Below are positions 1,561 through 20,465 of a stretch of 64,000 nucleotides of DNA, piece after piece. The DNA is taken from the sequence record phage_1, one strand, 5' to 3'. Made by a program: the position numbers and the translations under genes. The first letter of the stretch is position 1. Each line of letters starts with the position of its first letter. The notes beneath the pieces were generated by a model. The model was not told where the DNA came from and did not search any database. It saw only the letters and a program-made list of their open reading frames with translations.

Positions 1561-2048
1561 CCACGATAGCGTTCGATGGAAAAGTCTTAGCTGCTGACGG
1601 CCAGTTAACCCGTGGGTCGAATATCTGCAACCTGAATACCCAGAAGTTATTCGTCTGTCCTCCTGACGAGGAGTGGTGGATTACCGGTGAACGAATTGTG
1701 GTGTTCGGGGTAAGCGGCGACATCACAGGACAATTGGCCCTGCTGGAAACGGTCCGCTTGAGACCCGGCTACAAGGGGTTAACACAAAGCTCGCAGTTAC
1801 CTGCGAAGATGGATTTTACTTTCCTGATGCTTTTGGCCTCAGGAAAAGCGATAGTCGGTGGGAAGCGTGAAGACGACGTGTCGTTGTGGTGGAGTGAAGC
1901 CACACCACCTCTGGCAACCGGAAGCGGTTACGAGTATGCGTTGGGTGCGATGAAGATGGGCGCGAATGCGGTTCGTGCTGTTGAGATTGCGTCCGAATGC
2001 GATATCTACACCGGTGGTGAGATTAGCACTTACGAACTACGGAGGTGA
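1557..2048 (+). CDS. Ntn-hydrolase / HslV-like peptidase-family protein
   Basis: ATGA overlap with the upstream stop. Begins M-TTIAFDGKVLAADGQ (N-terminal Thr) and has ATGSGYEYALGAM, both typical of the proteasome-beta/HslV fold. True start is 1557, not 1494. Confidence 0.65.
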   Translation: MTTIAFDGKVLAADGQLTRGSNICNLNTQKLFVCPPDEEWWITGERIVVFGVSGDITGQLALLETVRLRPGYKGLTQSSQLPAKMDFTFLMLLASGKAIVGGKREDDVSLWWSEATPPLATGSGYEYALGAMKMGANAVRAVEIASECDIYTGGEISTYELRR

Positions 2049-2140
2049 ATCATGCGGGAGTCAGAAGCACGCAAGCTTGACCCCATCAATCGCCTGCGAT
2101 AACGGGGTAGCGCATCCGTATAAACACGTTAAAGAATTCT

Positions 2141-2216
2141 AGGAAAGTGACGCAATTGGTAGCGTACCGGTCTCCAAAACCGGCTGTTTAGAGTTCGAGT
2201 CTCTACTTTCCTGCCA
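2141..2216 (+). tRNA. trnW: tRNA-Trp (CCA)
   Basis: Full cloverleaf: acceptor AGGAAAG/CTTTCCT, D stem ACGC/GCGT, anticodon arm CCGGT-CTCCAAA-ACCGG (CCA at 2174-2176), T loop TTCGAGT, encoded 3' CCA. Confidence 0.95.
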
Positions 2217-2282
2217 CATTTAGCCAACAAGGCCATGATTCAAAGCAGAATGACACCGAATGTCTAACTGCGGAGAATAATC

Positions 2283-2525
2283 ATGAACTTGTATTTGCTA
2301 GAACGAACTGACGATATCGGGTATGATGAATTTGATTCCATAATCGTGGCGGCTCCTACGGAGCAAGCTGCGTGTGCAATTCCTCCCGACTGTGGTCATT
2401 GGATGGACTGCCGCTGGTTACCGAAAGAGCGCTGGGATGAAGGGCTTACCCTGACCGTTACTCTTATCGGTACTACGCACTATCCTGCTGGGACCGTCGT
2501 TCATGAATCGTTCAATGCTGGCTAA
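2283..2525 (+). CDS. Small hypothetical phage protein (paralog of 985..1560)
   Basis: GGAG SD. The 5' DNA cggagaat(t)aa(a)tcatgaacttgtat is shared with ORF 985. Confidence 0.8.
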   Translation: MNLYLLERTDDIGYDEFDSIIVAAPTEQAACAIPPDCGHWMDCRWLPKERWDEGLTLTVTLIGTTHYPAGTVVHESFNAG

Positions 2526-2704
2526 ACAGTGGGCTTCGGCCCACTAACCCTATTCGAGCCGTGATACTTACTCAGATTGTGCGGGTTGATGTCCCGCATG
2601 AGCCGGTAGCAGCTCAGACCTACGGTAGACCAATAAATCCGTAGCAGCCAGGTACACAAAGCACCAGGTCGCTTGTACAGGATGCTGGGTATCTGACCGG
2701 TCAT
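2522..2704 (-). CDS. Possible 60-aa hypothetical protein
   Basis: GAGGT SD 5' of the ATG on the minus strand; converges on the 2528-2545 hairpin. Confidence 0.35.
   Translation of the reverse strand: MTGQIPSILYKRPGALCTWLLRIYWSTVGLSCYRLMRDINPHNLSKYHGSNRVSGPKPTV
2528..2545. terminator. Hairpin with TTCG loop
   Basis: AGTGGGC-TTCG-GCCCACT directly after the ORF 2283 stop; no T-run. Confidence 0.5.
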
Positions 2705-2732
2705 AACCTCATTCGATACGAGACACGTTTAT

Positions 2733-3105
2733 GCATGAAATACTCCAGTACATCAGGATGTTGATTTCCAACGTCCGGTTCTGGGTATTCAATCATGTTT
2801 GGTTTACAGGCGATGGGTTTTCCCGCAAGGGCCCCACTTACAGACTGGCGTCTCCACGACAACCGTCCCTAGGGGACAGGCAAGCACCGGCCCATTAAGC
2901 CGCCACGCTACGCCTGTAAATCCACAATCTGATAACCGAATGGGATTGAGTTCCCAGTGTTAGGGTGACTATGTGTCACCGTAGGCGCGGTACCTCATAC
3001 GGCCGGTACGCCACGAATGTACGTGATAGCGGGTGGTGCTTGGAGACGCTAAGACCTGACCTTGCGGCCAGGCTCAGAAGAAGAAGTCCATCACCCGCAT
3101 TCAGA
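2733..3105 (+). ncRNA. Candidate structured ncRNA block 3
   Basis: Starts at the G of a TATG (2730-2733). Stems 2756-2763/2769-2776, 2801-2812/2911-2923 (ends ...ATCCA) and 3029-3038/3089-3098, plus a CCC-GCAA-GGG GNRA hairpin. Confidence 0.55.
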
Positions 3106-3300
3106 AATGAATTTAGGTTAATTATTGGAAGTGATGAAATCGTTTACGTGATAACTTAGTAGTATGCAACGAACAATACCAGAGTGACTTTACGAGGTTA
3201 CTGTGGTATATGTCGGTGCTCCGGGCAACGTGTTGCCGTAGATAAGCCCGAGGGAGCTGAGTGCACTAACACACACCGGGATGCACCGGCACCTTACAAT

Positions 3301-3369
3301 GGCTTTGTAGCTCAGGTAGGTAGAGCAACCTCTTCGAGGAAGGTCGCCGGTTCGAGTCCGGTCAAAGCA
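3301..3369 (+). ncRNA. tRNA-like element with shortened anticodon arm
   Basis: Acceptor GCTTTG/CAAAGC, TA at 8-9, D arm GCTC-AGGTAGGTA-GAGC, variable AGGTC and T arm GCCGG-TTCGAGT-CCGGT are canonical. The anticodon arm is only 13 nt (ACCTCTTCGAGGA) versus 17. No encoded CCA. Confidence 0.75.
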
Positions 3370-3370
3370 A

Positions 3371-3452
3371 GAGCAGCGAAGTTAGAGGAATTAACACCCG
3401 ACTCATAATCGGATATTTCGACGGTTCGAATCCGTGCCGTTTGCTCGCCCCA
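3371..3452 (+). pseudogene. Degenerate tRNA-Met/Ile2 (CAT)
   Basis: Anticodon arm CCGA-CTCATAA-TCGG (CAT at 3404-3406) and T loop GGTTCGAATCC are present. The acceptor stem is bulged and U8 is missing. Confidence 0.6.
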
Positions 3453-3790
3453 TTTGTGTTATCCTTATCCCGAAGGCATTCGAAATAAGACGCGTATCCA
3501 CACACGGGTCAAGGGTAACACGAACCACTTCCGCGGTCACCGTGTCCATTGCCGCCTACCTGCATGGGCTGTCCTCCGACACGGTGACTTCGGGCCAACT
3601 TACAGGCCAGGGCCGTTTGGGTTTTTCTTACGCATCCATCCAGAGCCACCTCGCGCCCTAGTCTGTTACCCCTTTTCTGTTCCTGGTTTGCCAACTAAAT
3701 CAATTAAGCCTGGTGCGTTGCCCTGGGAACAGAAAAACTTATTCGGTTACACACCGAACCCACCCACGAGGGATATGTCGTGGACTACCA
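3453..3790 (+). ncRNA. Candidate structured ncRNA block downstream of the tRNA-like pair
   Basis: Two perfect 11-bp stems (3536-3546/3578-3588 and 3673-3683/3726-3736). The overlapping N-terminal extension of ORF 3454 is not credible. Confidence 0.5.
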
Positions 3791-3828
3791 ATAGAAGCAG
3801 CAATAGTAGAAGTAAGAAGGAAAGCAAC

Positions 3829-4650
3829 ATGTTTACAGTTAAACGTGTAATTGATGGTGACCGCATTATTACCGAACATGAAAAAGTTCGTATCGGTGAC
3901 CGTAAGTCTCGTGTATTCCGCGAGGCGTTAAAGATGCTCGAGAACGAGCGCTTCGACATCGTTGTCGATGATGAAAAGTTAGCCCTTAATCCGGGGTTAA
4001 AACGCGTTGCCCCTGATGTGGCTGATCCGAACACCATGCATTTGTCTGACTACTGCAGCTGGTCGCACAGATTATATAAAAGTCAGGTTTATGCACACAC
4101 GTATTTGCGGCAGCTTTTCCCCAACCTTATTATCCCCGATTTGGAAACGGTCGAGGTGTTTAACTGCAACGCACGCGAGTTTATTAGCTACGTGCTAGAT
4201 AATAAGGGCAATGCTATCTTGGTATTGGACACAAATTCCCGCATACCTGATGCTGTGGCTAGCATACGTGGTGAAATCATCGGTTACGGTACTCCCCCAG
4301 AGAAATTAGGCTGGTACAAACCATCTCCTGATAGCGACATGGCGATCATTGTCTACACTCAGGAAGAACTGCAACAAGTCGAATTAGAGCCTGGTCCATC
4401 TATCGAGTTCACTGATGTCCAGGAGCAGTCGCAGTGGATTAACGGTGAGTCTGTTGTTACTGTTTTAAAAGGCGCTCGCCCTGGCGACCGGTCAGTCGAT
4501 GAACTGATTGGCGCAATGTGCATCGAAGAAGAATCTGGATACGATCCTGATAACCAGATCAGTACCGGTGCGTTGTACGAACTGTTTTATAAAGGCGACG
4601 AAGTCTACGTGGTTAACTCTCACGGTAAGACTACCGACGTCCTTCGCTGA
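3829..4650 (+). CDS. Hypothetical protein (273 aa)
   Basis: AAGGA SD before ATG 3829; terminator downstream. Confidence 0.8.
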   Translation: MFTVKRVIDGDRIITEHEKVRIGDRKSRVFREALKMLENERFDIVVDDEKLALNPGLKRVAPDVADPNTMHLSDYCSWSHRLYKSQVYAHTYLRQLFPNLIIPDLETVEVFNCNAREFISYVLDNKGNAILVLDTNSRIPDAVASIRGEIIGYGTPPEKLGWYKPSPDSDMAIIVYTQEELQQVELEPGPSIEFTDVQEQSQWINGESVVTVLKGARPGDRSVDELIGAMCIEEESGYDPDNQISTGALYELFYKGDEVYVVNSHGKTTDVLR

Positions 4651-4740
4651 ATTAGCTAACGCCCAGTAGCTATGTTCCTGACGATTAGCCCTCGTCTGAC
4701 CTTGTAAGACCTTGTAGATTTACATGCCAACACCAGGGAA

Positions 4741-4782
4741 GTCCTCACTCTTCGGAGTGAGGACAACTCTTTTATTTTTTTT
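4741..4782 (+). terminator. Intrinsic terminator
   Basis: GTCCTCACTC-TTCG-GAGTGAGGAC, then a T-rich tract. Confidence 0.85.
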
Positions 4783-4800
4783 TGTATCCCAAATATTCAC

Positions 4801-4816
4801 AGATAGATATTACCTA
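4801..4816 (+). promoter_or_regulatory. Class A phage promoter motif (AGATAGATATTAYCT)
   Basis: One of 8 intergenic or upstream copies of the motif; precedes ORF 4875. Confidence 0.7.
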
Positions 4817-4874
4817 AGTGAGATGAGAAAGCCTCATCTGAATTTCCCCAACTCGACTATAAAAGGTAAGCATC

Positions 4875-5825
4875 ATGTACAGACCAAGTAATCCTAGTGC
4901 TATTGAAGGATTAAACCAGGATGGCTTCAGCCTCGCAGAAGCAACCCGCATTCGACCTTTCTTACCTCGCAGATTCTTCCCTTTCGGTTCGTTATACAGA
5001 ACGAATTTCGACGCTTGGGAAGCGATACGTGCTGTAAAAGATGCACTACAGTACAAGAACTTCGAATTCCGATTTGTTTTCAAATGGGGCAACGGCGAAT
5101 TGCTCCACCACTTCGGATTCCAACAGAACGAGTTCATTGAGTATACCTCACCTACGTACCACACCAGGTTCTTAAGTATCGAATTCGTTCGCCATTTCGG
5201 CGATGCACTCTTTACGGAACGGGCTACAGATGAAAACCACGGACGTAGGCTGATGTTAACGAACGGCGCACTGCGCATCAAGATGAATCGTTTACGGGAA
5301 GCGTATAACCAGCTTATCAATCCTGAACCGGTAATGTTTCCAACTGTAGCTGATTTGAACATTACACCGCTCCAGTTGCCTGTGGATGTGGATAGACCGA
5401 TTCTGGCAATCCACGCTCTCCAGGCAGGCTATGCAAACTGGTATAAAGAGCACAGTCTCCCGAACACCAGATTGAACATCGCACCGTTTGAGTTGTGCCT
5501 GTTCTTAACGTTACGCAAACAGCTCGAGCCAGAAAACTTAGACTTACGTTATCTGGCTAAAACAGATAGCGGTAATTACTACCCAACGACCTGGATGCTG
5601 GCGGCTGTACTACCCGGCGGTGAAATTATCGGTAACCCAGTCACCGATGTTCAACAGTTACCATCACCGTTAGCACCACCGAAAGATTCAATCTATCCGT
5701 ACGCTTCGTGGTACGCGAGCAGTATTGGCGTGAGATGGTTAATGTTACACGTTCCTGAAGAGGTCTATAATTTATTCCCGCATGAGCAATGGCTCCGTGC
5801 GTATGAAAATCGGTTTGGTTACTAG
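4875..5825 (+). CDS. Hypothetical protein (316 aa)
   Basis: AAGGT SD, long ORF, flanked by a promoter motif and a terminator. Confidence 0.85.
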   Translation: MYRPSNPSAIEGLNQDGFSLAEATRIRPFLPRRFFPFGSLYRTNFDAWEAIRAVKDALQYKNFEFRFVFKWGNGELLHHFGFQQNEFIEYTSPTYHTRFLSIEFVRHFGDALFTERATDENHGRRLMLTNGALRIKMNRLREAYNQLINPEPVMFPTVADLNITPLQLPVDVDRPILAIHALQAGYANWYKEHSLPNTRLNIAPFELCLFLTLRKQLEPENLDLRYLAKTDSGNYYPTTWMLAAVLPGGEIIGNPVTDVQQLPSPLAPPKDSIYPYASWYASSIGVRWLMLHVPEEVYNLFPHEQWLRAYENRFGY

Positions 5826-5836
5826 TCGATGCTTTT

Positions 5837-5871
5837 GGGGGAACTTCGGTTCCCTCTTTTTTTTCTTTTTT
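5837..5871 (+). terminator. Intrinsic terminator
   Basis: GGGGGAAC-TTCG-GTTCCCTC plus T-run. Confidence 0.85.
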
Positions 5872-5907
5872 CACGACTGCCTCAGAATCTTAATGGAGGA
5901 AGTTACC

Positions 5908-6324
5908 ATGATTACGCAGTGCTCATACCAGACGCAAGATTTATTTAAAGCATTGGAAGAAAATAAGCTACCCACGACTTTAAGACCGCAGTGCAGTTAT
6001 TCAAGAATGCTTGCAAGTGAGGTCTTTCCGGTGCTAATGCAGTTGCCTCAATTCCAACCGTGGCTCGACTCGCTAGATGTGGTAGATGTTGTGGCTATCT
6101 ACACTGGGTCAGACACACCAACAATAAATACAAGCGAGTGTTTATCCCGTAGCGAATCGTCGGCGATAAATGAAATGCCGCAGCTAATGCCTTCTTTATT
6201 CGATTCGATGTGCGCTGCAGTTATGCAGAAACGACTACCTTATGAGGAAGTATTCGCCATTGTGTTAGACAGCATCCACGCAATGAATTATAAACACTAT
6301 AAAACCCTCGGAACCTTACACTGA
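5908..6324 (+). CDS. Hypothetical protein
   Basis: GGAGG SD before ATG 5908. Confidence 0.75.
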   Translation: MITQCSYQTQDLFKALEENKLPTTLRPQCSYSRMLASEVFPVLMQLPQFQPWLDSLDVVDVVAIYTGSDTPTINTSECLSRSESSAINEMPQLMPSLFDSMCAAVMQKRLPYEEVFAIVLDSIHAMNYKHYKTLGTLH

Positions 6325-18732: not shown

Positions 18733-20109
18733 ATTGACAGAATGAGAAAGGTACCAAAATTCTACGGAATATCCGGCCGGTTGGTTAGTCAGGATAACTA
18801 TTTGTCCGATTTGCAAATAGAAGCTGCTGCCAAAGGTATTAAACCACCCACTATTATTAACGATGTCGCCGTTAACGGGGATGCGATCGAGGTTGCTGAA
18901 CTTATCGATCGCATGGTACAGAACAGAATCGTTGACGAAGAACTGAACTCTGCACCGATTTGTAGTTTGGATTGTCCGGCACCGATCGCGCATCGTTACA
19001 ATCTCGGTTGTAAGTGTCCGACGTGTGGCTATGTTGTAACTGAACATCGAATTGAATCCGATGTCTGGTTACGTGCACCTGATGAAATGGGTAACTTCGT
19101 CAACCCACGATTCTGGGCAATGTTCAATGCTTTCTTTAATAGCAAGTTGAAGAAGTTTGAACGTAACAAGGTCACTATCGAACGCGGTAATGACTTGATG
19201 ATGTGGATGATTGACCCGTATTACCGTATAGAAGAACCAGACGGTAAACGCGCACATGCTGTGAAACGTGTATTGGAAGAACATGGTTTCGTTCGTGGCT
19301 TGCGCAATCTGGTTGATAACCACGTTAGTATCTTTAACATCCTTACCACGCCAGAAGCCTGGAAGGAAATCTTCGCACCTAATCGGCATAACGCCGCTGA
19401 AGGTGAACGCTTACGTTTACAATGGAAGGAGCTATTCGAAACGCAACGTCACGCATTCTTTCCAAGACATTTACCGCTAATCTCCTCTAAACTTATCGTT
19501 ACTGAGGAAGGTCGTCGTGGTGTCATGGTAGACCCAGTGTTCACGGGTGCTATTGACGCGGTGAAAAATATCGCGTTGCTCTATACGCGGCGTAAAGCGA
19601 TCGAACCACGTTTTCTGATTAGTCGTGCTTTGAAGGCGAACCGTCAGCTAACGTACTTCCACATGGACTTCCGTCGTGAGTCTATGGAAGGTAAACCGGG
19701 TGACTATCGTGCGAAATTGGGTTCTACCCATATCCCGTTCGGTGGTCGTGCAACCATCTCACCTATCTCAGAACCACACGATGCCTGGAAGTTAAAAGCA
19801 CCGTGGCGTTGGATGGTTGGGTTGATGTCGACCCACATCGAGAACAAACTGCTACGACGGGGTTATTCGTCGCGGCAATGTGAGCGTATCGTTGCAAAAG
19901 CGGCAATGCAGTATGACCCGCTTGTAGACGAAATCTTTAAAGAACTGATTCGTGAATCCCCAGGCGGTCTTGGGATCATGGTCATACCGTTACGTAACCC
20001 AACGCTGGTACAGTTGTCTATTCAAACGCTGTACATCGATGAAGTTGTTACCGATGTTAACCAGTGTTCGCTGCGTATCTCTGACCGTGTGATCAAGATG
20101 GCTAACGGT
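18724..20109 (+). CDS. rpoC: Non-virion RNAP beta-prime N-terminal subunit, exon 1 (phiKZ gp55-like)
   Basis: Zn ribbon CSLDC..CKCPTC, GGRATISP and RNPTL. Ends ..KMANG at the predicted 5' splice site. Confidence 0.85.
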
Positions 20110-20465
20110 TCGAAAAGAGCCCCATCGGACGGGAAACCTCTGATGCGTATTCTCCTGAAATGCTGGGAAACCCTAAAGCGTATCTACCAGAAATGGGGAC
20201 GAAAGTCTGAAACAACAGATACGATGGCCTACGCTAAACAATACTGCTAACGGTTGTGATAATGGGTAATCAGCAGCGAAGCCTCGTGAGAGGAACGTTC
20301 AACGACTATCGCTGAAATGCGAGTAGGGGTCCCAGTGGACTTCGAAGTGGGAGAACACCTAAGGCGATAGCTATGGTGAAGATATAGTCTGTGCCTTATC
20401 GAGAGATAAGGAGGGTGTCTTAGCACACCTGCTGTATACGGAAACGGTATACGATGGACAAACAG
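20110..20465 (+). mobile_element. Group I self-splicing intron, 356 nt, no homing endonuclease
   Basis: P1 GGTTC-GAAAA-GAGCC has a U-G pair at 20109. Conserved elements: P AAATGCTGGGAAA (20158), Q AATCAGCAG (20268), R GTTCAACGACTA (20297), S GAAGATATAGTCT (20378). P7 GACTAT/ATAGTC, P9 CCTTATC-GAGA-GATAAGG, terminal G at 20465. Splicing restores NGDFDGD in frame. Confidence 0.92.

What the first reader, a model, noticed from the sequence alone, without database searches (positions are those of the whole stretch)
3212..3452. Anticodon-less tRNA mimic in tandem with a degenerate tRNA-CAT, behind a structured leader
Element 3301-3369 keeps canonical acceptor, D, variable and T arms, but its anticodon arm is 4 nt short (CCTC-TTC-GAGG, no 7-nt loop). 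Precise loss of only the decoding arm looks selected rather than decayed. It recalls the tRNA-like domains of bacterial YrlA Y RNAs and tmRNA, or a decoy for anticodon nucleases (PrrC, RloC, PARIS AriB) or synthetases. It follows a multi-stem leader (3212-3219/3283-3290) starting at a predicted TSS and is immediately followed by a damaged tRNA-Met/Ile2.
Basis: partly seen in the sequence, partly recalled or inferred. Interest (0 to 1): 0.75.

Follow-up and report, generated by a model that had tools for sequence, protein, structure and literature searches.

The report
Conserved anticodon-less tRNA-like phage RNA
A jumbo phage of E. coli carries a tRNA-shaped gene whose decoding loop is missing; the same gene, with a different non-decoding arm in each lineage, is kept in three related phage genera always fused to a tRNA-Ile2-type gene, so it is a selected non-translating tRNA mimic of unknown role.

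Summary
The window is the start of Escherichia phage vB_EcoM_Lh1B, an SPN3US-like jumbo phage (Seoulvirus). Bases 3301-3370 score as tRNA in Rfam (40.9 bits, cut-off 29), but the anticodon arm is a 4-bp stem with a 3-nt loop, and ARAGORN rejects it.

It is not an error or simple decay:
- Every relative examined has a homologue (Seoulvirus, Machinavirus, Erskinevirus, one uncultured contig).
- Across 12 distinct versions the acceptor and T stems are fully paired, with compensatory changes in 9 of 12 pairs.
- Position 1:72 is an invariant G•A mismatch followed by A73.
- The middle arm is a hairpin of 11 to 51 nt and never a canonical anticodon arm.

The element always abuts a tRNA(CAT) of tRNA-Ile2 type with no spacer. 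Neither encodes CCA, whereas all ordinary tRNAs of these clusters do. In Lh1B the tRNA(CAT) is sub-threshold (21.5 bits). The "leader" is the conserved promoter-proximal leader of the tRNA operon.

There is no support for YrlA, tmRNA or an anticodon-nuclease decoy. My best reading is a non-decoding tRNA "top-half" module of a dimeric precursor, cut out by RNase P. A trans-acting mimic of the tRNA acceptor end is not excluded.

The parts
3150..3204 (+). Invariant promoter-proximal block upstream of the leader
   Evidence: 0 of 55 columns vary in 13 Seoulvirus genomes, against 5-14% in neighbouring segments. The block is also conserved in the divergent phage SPAsTU (L006 about 40-100). There is no sigma-70-like site and no second copy in the window.
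3205..3300 (+). Leader of the tRNA operon: TATG at 3209-3212, outer stem 3212-3219/3283-3290, then ACC and the ACAAT spacer
   Evidence: MFE -36.7 kcal/mol, z=-2.3. In SPAsTU the homologous leader (L006 101-197) is the 5' UTR of a 64-aa ORF that heads the tRNA array. The inner hairpin is not conserved there. TATG is the phiKZ late-promoter motif (PMC7598289). The TSS is inferred only.
3301..3370 (+). Anticodon-less tRNA-like RNA gene (element 1): G1•A72, 6-bp acceptor, canonical D arm, 4-bp/3-nt arm at 3329-3339, canonical T arm, A73
   Evidence: Rfam tRNA 40.9 bits, ARAGORN negative, cloverleaf MFE. Homologues in 24 loci with covariation. Six variable sites among 13 Seoulvirus genomes, all in loops, at unpaired positions or G•U-compatible.
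3329..3339 (+). Truncated 'anticodon' hairpin CCTC-TTC-GAGG
   Evidence: The loop letters vary (TTC, TTT, ATC) while the stem is constant in close relatives. In other lineages it is replaced by hairpins of 11-51 nt.
3371..3449 (+). tRNA(CAT) of tRNA-Ile2 type (element 2), non-canonical and sub-threshold in this genome: 8-bp acceptor helix from G3371, anticodon 3404-3406, extra G3436 in the T stem, bulged 3' acceptor strand 3438-3446, no encoded CCA
   Evidence: Rfam tRNA 21.5 bits, below 29. Relatives score 31-47 bits and are called tRNA-Met/Ile2. The anticodon arm CCCGA-CTCATAA-TCGGA is identical to that of the ordinary tRNA-Ile of Klebsiella phage RothC.

Best explanation
Element 3301-3370 is a functional, non-decoding tRNA-like RNA gene. 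It belongs to a family kept in SPN3US-related jumbo phages (Seoulvirus, Machinavirus, Erskinevirus).

What selection preserves is the tRNA 'top half': a 6-bp acceptor stem, the T arm, an unpaired G1•A72 and A73. The arm at the anticodon position only has to be some hairpin.

The element is the 5' member of a dimeric precursor with a tRNA(CAT) of tRNA-Ile2 type. There is no spacer and neither member encodes CCA. The pair is transcribed from the promoter and leader at about 3150-3300 as part of the phage tRNA operon.

Proposed mechanism (inferred, not shown):
1. Host RNase P cuts at G3301, which releases the leader.
2. RNase P also cuts at G3371. This defines the 5' end of the tRNA(CAT) and leaves element 1 ending exactly at its discriminator A73.
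3. The invariant G1•A72 mismatch keeps A72 and A73 single-stranded, so they can act as the 2-nt leader for the second cut.
4. The host CCA-adding enzyme then finishes both RNAs, or tags the weak-ended, GG-starting element 1 with CCACCA for removal.

On this reading the element is a built-in processing and punctuation module, not a decoder.

Confidence that it is a selected non-decoding tRNA-like RNA is about 0.85. Confidence that its main role is cis-processing is about 0.45. The confidence value given for this entry (0.5) refers to the statement as a whole.
For: Shown:
- tRNA-model hit with a deleted anticodon loop.
- Homologues in all 24 related loci, always directly 5' of the tRNA(CAT) with the junction ...C71-A72-A73|G.
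- Across 12 distinct top halves, pairs 2-7:66-71 and the T stem are 100% paired. Nine of 12 pairs have changes on both sides. The covariation score is 0.718 against 0.288 in shuffles (0 of 500 reach it) and at most 0.162 for slid registers. Position 1:72 is G•A in 12 of 12.
- The middle arm is 4 bp/3 nt, 6/5, 6/6, 7/3, 6/4 (GUAA), 4/4 or a 51-nt three-helix arm. It is always a well-formed hairpin. Erwinia-phage versions fold as four-way junctions with z of -2.4 to -3.3.
- All ordinary tRNAs in these clusters, and the window's tRNA-Trp, encode CCA with 5-10-nt spacers. Element 1 and the tRNA(CAT) do not.
- Within 13 Seoulvirus genomes, all six variable sites of element 1 spare the stems.
- By contrast, a neighbouring T-arm-like sequence that is intact in Machinavirus has decayed in Seoulvirus (GTGGTTCAACTCCAC in L005 against GTGGTACGTTGAGTG in L002). 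Unselected tRNA-like sequence does decay at this locus.

From the literature: CCA-adding enzymes tag tRNAs with unstable acceptor stems with CCACCA, in E. coli too (PMC5824355).
Against: - No expression or processing data exist for this locus in any of these phages. No transcript data for SPN3US turned up.
- A purely cis role does not obviously need a full L-shaped body with canonical tertiary nucleotides (U8, A14, G15-C48, G18G19, G46, T54-A58), all of which the Lh1B version keeps.
- In Lh1B, EC001 and phage 1252 the partner tRNA(CAT) has T-stem or acceptor defects, while element 1 stays intact. This suggests element 1 has value beyond serving its neighbour.
- AUA use in the window is only 4.8 per 1000 codons, so demand for tRNA-Ile2 is modest.
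- Zero spacing also means the two genes cannot easily be lost separately, so their constant linkage is weak evidence of functional coupling.
Confidence: 0.5

Rival explanations
1. Trans-acting mimic of the tRNA acceptor end. After processing and CCA addition, the free RNA of about 73 nt binds, titrates or is modified by a host or phage factor that reads only the acceptor/T minihelix. Candidates are a toxin or defence enzyme acting on tRNA 3' ends, or a factor that reads a 1:72 mismatch as in initiator tRNA.
For: Only the top half, G1•A72 and A73 are invariant. The acceptor end G1xA72, G2:C71, C3:G70, A73 in Lh1B and six other lineages resembles that of E. coli initiator tRNA (C1xA72, G2:C71, C3:G70, A73; from memory). 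The full L-shape is preserved in Lh1B. The element stays intact where the partner tRNA is defective. Related loci hold other tRNA-like sequences without an anticodon that do encode CCA (L005 645-747 and 1128-1205).
Against: No partner protein was identified, and the seven flanking ORFs have no Pfam domain. A stoichiometric decoy would have to compete with the whole cellular tRNA pool. C3:G70 is U3:A70 in five Erwinia-phage lineages and G2:C71 is A2:U71 in pEa_SNUABM_43. No expression data exist.
Confidence: 0.22
2. Neutral relic: a dying tRNA gene in a tRNA cluster that this lineage is losing, with no function of its own.
For: The SPN3US group has lost most of the cluster: the Tyr-Glu-Asp-Ile-Gln array, a 262-bp block and tRNA-Asn. 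The neighbouring tRNA(CAT) is sub-threshold. Records annotate the element inconsistently as tRNA-OTHER or tRNA-Asp, or not at all.
Against: Compensatory changes occur in 9 of 12 stem pairs across genera, with 100% pairing. The non-decoding state is shared by genera that still have intact tRNA arrays. The arms are clean hairpins rather than broken stems. All six within-group substitutions avoid the stems.
Confidence: 0.08
3. Decoy for anticodon nucleases (PrrC, RloC, PARIS AriB), or a relative of YrlA or tmRNA.
For: General resemblance only: a tRNA body without a decoding loop, in a phage.
Against: The anticodon loop is absent and its replacement varies freely in length and sequence. There is no YrlA hit at E<=10 and no tmRNA by ARAGORN. 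There is no G3:U70. No long helix is formed by the 5' and 3' ends, and both ends are those of a plain acceptor stem.
Confidence: 0.03
4. An aminoacylated but non-ribosomal tRNA. A synthetase that ignores the anticodon charges it, the 1:72 mismatch keeps it off EF-Tu, and it donates its amino acid to a non-ribosomal acceptor.
For: Invariant A73 and the 1:72 mismatch. The tRNA body is intact in Lh1B.
Against: There is no G3:U70 (AlaRS) and no G-1:C73 (HisRS). Only the pEa_SNUABM_6 type may carry a long variable arm as SerRS needs. The bottom half and the D arm are not conserved between genera. No transferase gene is evident nearby.
Confidence: 0.05
5. Protein-coding sequence or an assembly error rather than an RNA gene.
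For: ORF 3184-3408 (74 aa, GTG start) overlaps the element. SPN3US, SaP7, SPLA5c and SPFM4 annotate a minus-strand hypothetical CDS over the homologous stretch.
Against: The plus-strand ORF is split by the 262-bp block in many relatives. All three minus-strand frames carry stops in Lh1B. The 13-nt arm recurs in more than 20 independent assemblies.
Confidence: 0.01

Closest known systems
Dimeric, CCA-less tRNA precursors and the small stable RNAs (species 1 and 2, rnaC and rnaD) of the phage T4 tRNA cluster (from memory; not checked in a paper here)
   Same: Phage tRNA operon. Two tRNA-shaped units abut with almost no spacer. CCA is not encoded, so maturation depends on host RNase P and the CCA-adding enzyme. 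Stable non-decoding RNAs are co-transcribed with the tRNAs.
   Different: In T4 both members of each dimer are decoders. Here the 5' member has no anticodon loop, carries an invariant G1•A72, and has a bottom half that is swapped between lineages.
mascRNA and MEN-beta tRNA-like elements (Rfam RF01684)
   Same: tRNA-like units that are not decoders. They recruit RNase P to make the 3' end of the upstream RNA, are finished by the CCA-adding enzyme, and are tagged CCACCA when the acceptor is weak.
   Different: These are eukaryotic nuclear lncRNAs. RF01684 gives no hit on 3000-3700 at E<=10. Whether the phage element works this way is inferred.
YrlA, the bacterial Y RNA (Rfam RF02553)
   Same: A tRNA-like domain with T and D arms and a shortened anticodon-side stem. 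Some phages encode such RNAs.
   Different: In YrlA the 5' and 3' ends form a Ro-binding helix and the gene sits near rsr. Here the ends form a plain acceptor stem, the model does not hit, and the seven flanking ORFs show no Pfam domain of any kind, hence no TROVE.
tRNA-like domain of tmRNA
   Same: Acceptor and T arm without an anticodon.
   Different: There is no G3:U70, no mRNA-like part and no pseudoknots. ARAGORN finds no tmRNA.
Ordinary phage tRNA-Ile2(CAU) genes, for example in Klebsiella phage RothC (for element 2)
   Same: Identical anticodon arm CCCGA-CTCATAA-TCGGA, including the C27•A43 mismatch.
   Different: The RothC gene has a 7-bp acceptor and encoded CCA and stands alone. The SPN3US-clade gene has an 8-bp helix and no CCA, is fused to element 1, and in Lh1B has a bulged T stem and a bulged acceptor.

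Membership tests
tRNA (Rfam RF00005), as a structural class | Covariance-model score at or above the gathering score of 29 bits | tested here: met
   40.9 bits, E=3.2e-5 over the window. The Erwinia-phage homologues of element 1 do not reach E<=0.5.
tRNA, as a functional decoder | Anticodon arm with a 5-bp stem and a 7-nt loop carrying U33 and a purine at 37 | tested here: not met
   The arm is a 4-bp stem with a 3-nt loop. ARAGORN gives no call. None of the 12 lineage variants has a canonical loop.
tRNA, as a functional decoder | 3' CCA end and aminoacylation | not testable with these tools
   CCA is not encoded: the sequence runs ...GCAA|GAGC. Addition of CCA and charging need experiments.
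YrlA (RF02553) | Match to the family covariance model | tested here: not met
   No YrlA match at E<=10 on 3000-3700. In relatives only weak hits of 23-26 bits (gathering score 69) appear, and these span adjacent true tRNAs.
YrlA (RF02553) | Ro-binding helix formed by the 5' and 3' ends, and an rsr (TROVE) gene nearby | tested here: inconclusive
   The ends form only a 6-bp acceptor stem. Seven flanking ORFs have no Pfam hit. The rest of the 240-kb genome was not scanned for TROVE.
tmRNA | Detection by a tmRNA finder, G3:U70 and a tag reading frame | tested here: not met
   ARAGORN finds none in the window. Position 3:70 is C:G.
mascRNA-type tRNA-like processing signal (RF01684) | Match to the family model | tested here: not met
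   No hit at E<=10. The functional analogy (RNase P makes the upstream 3' end) was not tested.
Dimeric phage tRNA precursor (T4 type) | Two tRNA-shaped units with no or minimal spacer and no encoded CCA, inside a tRNA operon | tested here: met
   A73 (3370) is followed directly by G3371 of the tRNA(CAT) helix in all 24 loci. Neither unit encodes CCA, whereas every ordinary tRNA in the clusters does.
Dimeric phage tRNA precursor (T4 type) | Ordered processing by RNase P and the CCA-adding enzyme | not testable with these tools
   This needs in vitro cleavage assays or end-mapping in vivo.
Anticodon-nuclease decoy | Presents the anticodon loop that the nuclease recognises | tested here: not met
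   The loop is absent, and what replaces it varies freely.

The most novel reading that the evidence does not exclude
The processed RNA is a trans-acting mimic of the tRNA acceptor end: a tRNA body with no decoding loop, an initiator-like unpaired 1:72, A73 and an added CCA. Nucleus-forming jumbo phages would use it to occupy or divert a host factor that acts on tRNA 3' ends or on the initiator acceptor end, such as a tRNA-end-modifying abortive-infection toxin. It would be one of several anticodon-less tRNA mimics encoded in the tRNA operon of this phage clade.
Probability: 0.18. Interest if true: 0.8.

Novelty: new variant of a known kind. Interest (0 to 1): 0.5.

Why it matters
Phage tRNA genes are usually discussed as codon-usage helpers or as replacements for tRNAs that the host destroys. 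Here a tRNA-shaped gene has given up decoding yet has been maintained by selection across at least three genera of nucleus-forming jumbo phages. It keeps a precise acceptor-end signature (G1•A72, A73, no CCA) and is always fused to a tRNA-Ile2-type gene.

If the role is in cis, it is a bacterial-virus counterpart of the tRNA-like processing signals known from eukaryotic lncRNAs and herpesvirus TMERs. If the role is in trans, it would be a new type of phage tRNA mimic.

There is also a practical point. Genome records call this element tRNA-OTHER, tRNA-Asp or a hypothetical protein, or leave it out. ARAGORN here calls one version tRNA-Pro. tRNA counts for these phages are therefore unreliable.

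Tried and rejected
- Rfam at gathering and at permissive thresholds on the window and on six related loci gave only tRNA hits. No YrlA, tmRNA, mascRNA or ribozyme family explains the element, the leader or the 262-bp block of relatives.
- Sigma-70 promoter and terminator scans gave no site upstream of the leader and no plus-strand terminator after element 2.
- A search for a repeated promoter motif found only the site itself.
- Pfam and PHROGs on seven flanking ORFs found no informative domain. The only named hit is the HslV-like peptidase family for ORF 1557-2048.
- The search for related loci with the downstream protein recovered only SPN3US.
- Pattern scans of the viral and metagenome collections for the tRNA(CAT) arm added few new lineages.
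- The leader has no detectable similarity outside Seoulvirus.
- Klebsiella phage Eowyn shares a distant homologue of the downstream protein but no tRNA cluster.
- tRNA(CAT)-like hits in Felixounavirus-like phages, Pollock and Klebsiella phages are ordinary tRNA genes with no element-1 partner.
- Literature searches found no description of this element and no SPN3US transcript data.
- The coding and sequencing-error explanations were rejected.

Full report
**Source of the window.** Bases 2000-6000 are 100% identical to Escherichia phage vB_EcoM_Lh1B (OK428535.1, 240 kb, genus Seoulvirus) at the same coordinates. They are 92-99% identical to Salmonella phage SPN3US and about 35 relatives. In that record the stretch 3160-3828 carries no feature. 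The only annotated tRNA is tRNA-Trp at 2141-2216.

**The observation.**
- Rfam's tRNA model hits 3301-3370 at 40.9 bits (gathering score 29, E=3.2e-5 for the window). The anticodon-loop positions are deleted in the alignment.
- ARAGORN reports only tRNA-Trp.
- Read against the standard numbering, the element has U8, A9, a 4-bp D stem with loop AGGTAGGTA (A14, G15, G18, G19, A21), A26, variable loop AGGTC (G46, C48) and T arm GCCGG-TTCGAGT-CCGGT. The acceptor stem is paired at 2-7:66-71.
- The arm at the anticodon position is A27•A43 plus CCTC-TTC-GAGG, which is 13 nt instead of 17.
- The MFE structure is exactly this cloverleaf. The z-score of -1.05 is unremarkable, as is usual for tRNAs.
- The second element hits the tRNA model at 21.5 bits over 3373-3445, below the cut-off, with anticodon CAT at 3404-3406.

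**Close relatives.**
- All SPN3US-group genomes read carry the same 70-nt element.
- In an alignment of 13 of them, six columns of the element vary: 3316 (D loop), 3328 (unpaired position 27), 3333 and 3335 (the 3-nt loop: TTC, TTT, ATC), 3348 (C to T, which keeps a G•U pair in the T stem) and 3357 (T loop). None breaks a stem.
- The short arm therefore recurs in many independent assemblies and is not a sequencing error.
- Record annotation is inconsistent: tRNA-OTHER in SPN3US, tRNA-Asp in Proteus phage 7, a minus-strand hypothetical CDS in several records, and nothing in Lh1B.

**Distant relatives.** In Machinavirus, Erskinevirus, the divergent Seoulviruses SPAsTU and pEa_SNUABM_29, and one uncultured contig, the same position lies inside a real tRNA array (Tyr, Glu, Asp, Ile, Gln, His, Ser, then CAT and Asn). 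The homologue of the window's gene 3829-4650 follows the array. Directly 5' of the tRNA(CAT) there is always a homologue of element 1.

I took the acceptor strands, the T arm and A73 of the 12 distinct versions and joined them into 32-nt strings, because the middle parts cannot be aligned. I then counted pairs on these strings:
- Pairs 2-7:66-71 and the five T-stem pairs are standard pairs in every sequence.
- Nine of the 12 pairs show changes on both sides.
- The covariation score is 0.718, against 0.288 ± 0.037 in column shuffles (0 of 500 reach it). Registers slid by 1-3 columns reach at most 0.162.
- Position 1:72 is G opposite A in 12 of 12, and position 73 is always A.

This is strong evidence that an RNA with this helix geometry, terminal mismatch included, is under selection.

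**The arm at the anticodon position differs in every lineage**:

| Lineage | Arm |
|---|---|
| SPN3US group | 4 bp / 3 nt |
| SPAsTU | 51-nt arm of three stacked helices ending in a GAAA loop (whole RNA z=-4.1) |
| pSal-SNUABM-04 | 6 bp / 5 nt |
| pEa_SNUABM_29, pEa_SNUABM_9, ChrisDB | 6 bp / 6 nt |
| Caitlin | 7 bp / 3 nt |
| phiEaH2, Stratton | 6 bp / GUAA |
| uncultured contig (UViG 3300011741) | 4 bp / 4 nt |
| pEa_SNUABM_10, pEa_SNUABM_43, pEa_SNUABM_6 | other shapes |

- In pSal-SNUABM-04 ARAGORN reads tRNA-Pro(cgg), but the loop CCCGGCG has C33 and C37.
- No version has a canonical anticodon loop.
- The D arm is canonical only in Seoulvirus, pSal-SNUABM-04 and the uncultured contig. The Erwinia-phage versions have a 5-bp hairpin with loop UCGGU. 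They are not recognised by the Rfam tRNA model, yet they fold as four-way junctions with z of -2.4 to -3.3.
- The conserved unit is therefore the tRNA top half. The bottom half only has to fold.

**Context.**
- Every ordinary tRNA of these clusters, and the window's tRNA-Trp, encodes its CCA and is separated from its neighbour by 5-10 nt.
- Element 1 and the tRNA(CAT) are the exceptions. The sequence runs ...C71-A72-A73 and then directly into the G that opens the tRNA(CAT) acceptor helix. Element 1 has no CCA. The tRNA(CAT) ends in GCC followed by C or T, or in GCT.
- The tRNA(CAT) has an 8-bp acceptor helix.
- Its anticodon arm is nearly invariant across genera (Caitlin differs only by a compensated C28:G42 to T28:A42 change). 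That arm is letter-for-letter the arm of the ordinary, CCA-bearing tRNA-Ile of Klebsiella phage RothC, including the C27•A43 mismatch. It is therefore of tRNA-Ile2(CAU) type.
- In Seoulvirus its 3' acceptor strand carries a one-base bulge. Lh1B, EC001 and phage 1252 also carry an extra G at 3436. EC001 combines the T-stem 5' strand of one variant with the 3' strand of another, which breaks the stem.
- AUA makes up 4.8 per 1000 codons in the window's long ORFs, so demand for this tRNA is modest.
- 'Degenerate' is fair for Lh1B. The gene family as a whole is non-canonical rather than dead.

**The leader.**
- Columns 3150-3204 are invariant in 13 genomes, whereas neighbouring segments vary at 5-14%.
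- This block and the leader 3205-3300 are also conserved in SPAsTU, whose downstream protein is only 62% identical. There the leader is followed by GAGGAG and the ATG of a 64-aa ORF that heads the tRNA array.
- The leader is therefore the promoter-proximal 5' leader of the tRNA operon. In the SPN3US group it was brought next to element 1 by loss of the array.
- Its outer stem 3212-3219/3283-3290 is invariant, so it gives no information on covariation. The inner GGCAAC/GTTGCC hairpin is not kept in SPAsTU.
- G3212 is the G of a TATG. In phiKZ the late-promoter element is T(-3)ATG(+1) (PMC7598289).
- No sigma-70-type promoter was found.

**Two deletions shaped the Lh1B locus.**
- Many relatives (Proteus phage 7, MET_P1, the SPFM phages, SPLA5c, phage 1252) carry a block of about 262 bp between the leader and element 1, flanked by the direct repeat ACAATGG. 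Lh1B, SPN3US and others lack it.
- tRNA-Asn, present in MET_P1, SPAsTU and the other genera, is missing at a TCGC(C/T) repeat, which leaves GCTCGCC|CCATTTG.
- Element 1 survived both events in every genome.

**Coding alternatives.** ORF 3184-3408 is split by the 262-bp block in relatives. The minus-strand CDS annotated in SPN3US has stops in all three frames in Lh1B.

**Mechanism (inference).**
- The acceptor/T minihelix and the elbow are what RNase P and the CCA-adding enzyme recognise (established knowledge). Element 1 should therefore be cut at G3301.
- Cleavage at the 5' end of the tRNA(CAT) would leave element 1 ending exactly at A73.
- The invariant G1•A72 mismatch leaves A72-A73 unpaired. 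This gives the otherwise leaderless tRNA(CAT) a short single-stranded 5' leader, which is a rationale for conserving a mismatch.
- A weak acceptor end starting with GG is also the kind of substrate that CCA-adding enzymes tag with CCACCA for RNase R. PMC5824355 covers the E. coli pathway. The GG requirement is from memory (Wilusz et al. 2011).
- I therefore favour a cis-acting processing or punctuation module of a dimeric precursor.

Two facts pull towards a role of its own in trans. The full set of tertiary-interaction nucleotides is kept in Lh1B, and the element stays intact where its partner is defective. Its acceptor end (unpaired 1:72, G2:C71, C3:G70, A73) resembles that of initiator tRNA (from memory). 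I cannot separate the two roles with sequence alone.

**Comparison and novelty.**
- The element works like known tRNA-like processing signals (mascRNA, MHV68 TMER vtRNAs) and like the CCA-less T4 dimeric precursors. It is not a member of YrlA, tmRNA or mascRNA by model or by anatomy.
- I found no paper describing it.
- I rate it a new variant of a known kind.

Noticed in passing
window 20090-20411 (+): Group I catalytic intron, Rfam RF00028, 69.4 bits (cut-off 50), with the full-length model matched. The interrupted gene was not examined.
   Followed up: no
L002 1801-2064 (Proteus phage 7); also L004, L021, L022, L030, L033; the 79-nt core is also at L006 1076-1154 and L007 1023-1101: A block of about 262 bp, absent from the window, lies between the leader and element 1 and is flanked by ACAATGG repeats. 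It starts with a 79-nt cloverleaf-like RNA that is conserved across genera. This RNA has a closing stem GGGAGCG/CGTTCCC, with a G7:C to A7:U change in pSal-SNUABM-04, and three hairpins. One hairpin has a T-loop-like AUUCGUA loop and one has an invariant GGAA tetraloop. There is no Rfam match.
   Followed up: partly
L005 645-747 and 1128-1205 (pSal-SNUABM-04); L010 about 980-1100, which equals L027 490-609: Further tRNA-like sequences without a normal anticodon arm occur in Machinavirus and Erskinevirus tRNA clusters, and some have an encoded CCA. One 120-nt example is annotated 'tRNA-Ile(aat)' in phage Stratton. The clade seems to hold several families of non-decoding tRNA-like RNAs. Covariation was not tested for these.
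   Followed up: partly
L024, L025 and L026, about 723-830: In pEa_SNUABM_9, pEa_SNUABM_6 and ChrisDB the tRNA(CAT) next to element 1 carries a long, paired variable arm (for example GAGATACCC-GGC-GGGTATCTT). This makes it class-II-like, and those records do not annotate it as a tRNA.
   Followed up: no
L015 815-1354 (Salmonella phage 1252): A 540-nt hypothetical CDS is inserted just after the tRNA(CAT), where other genomes have tRNA-Asn or nothing. It may be a mobile gene.
   Followed up: no
window 3454-4650 (+): The reading frame of the gene annotated at 3829-4650 is open from 3454. The protein matches PHROG 17697 only from profile position 75 of 344, and JN03 annotates an earlier start. Part of the 380-nt 'spacer' after element 2 may therefore be coding in some relatives.
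   Followed up: no
L018 (EC001), homologous to window 3420-3446: The EC001 tRNA(CAT) combines the SPN3US-type 5' T-stem strand (GACGG) with the phage-1252-type 3' strand (CCCTGC), which breaks the stem. This looks like recombination between variants inside the gene. EC001 is also the only genome with a stem change (G•U) in element 1.
   Followed up: partly
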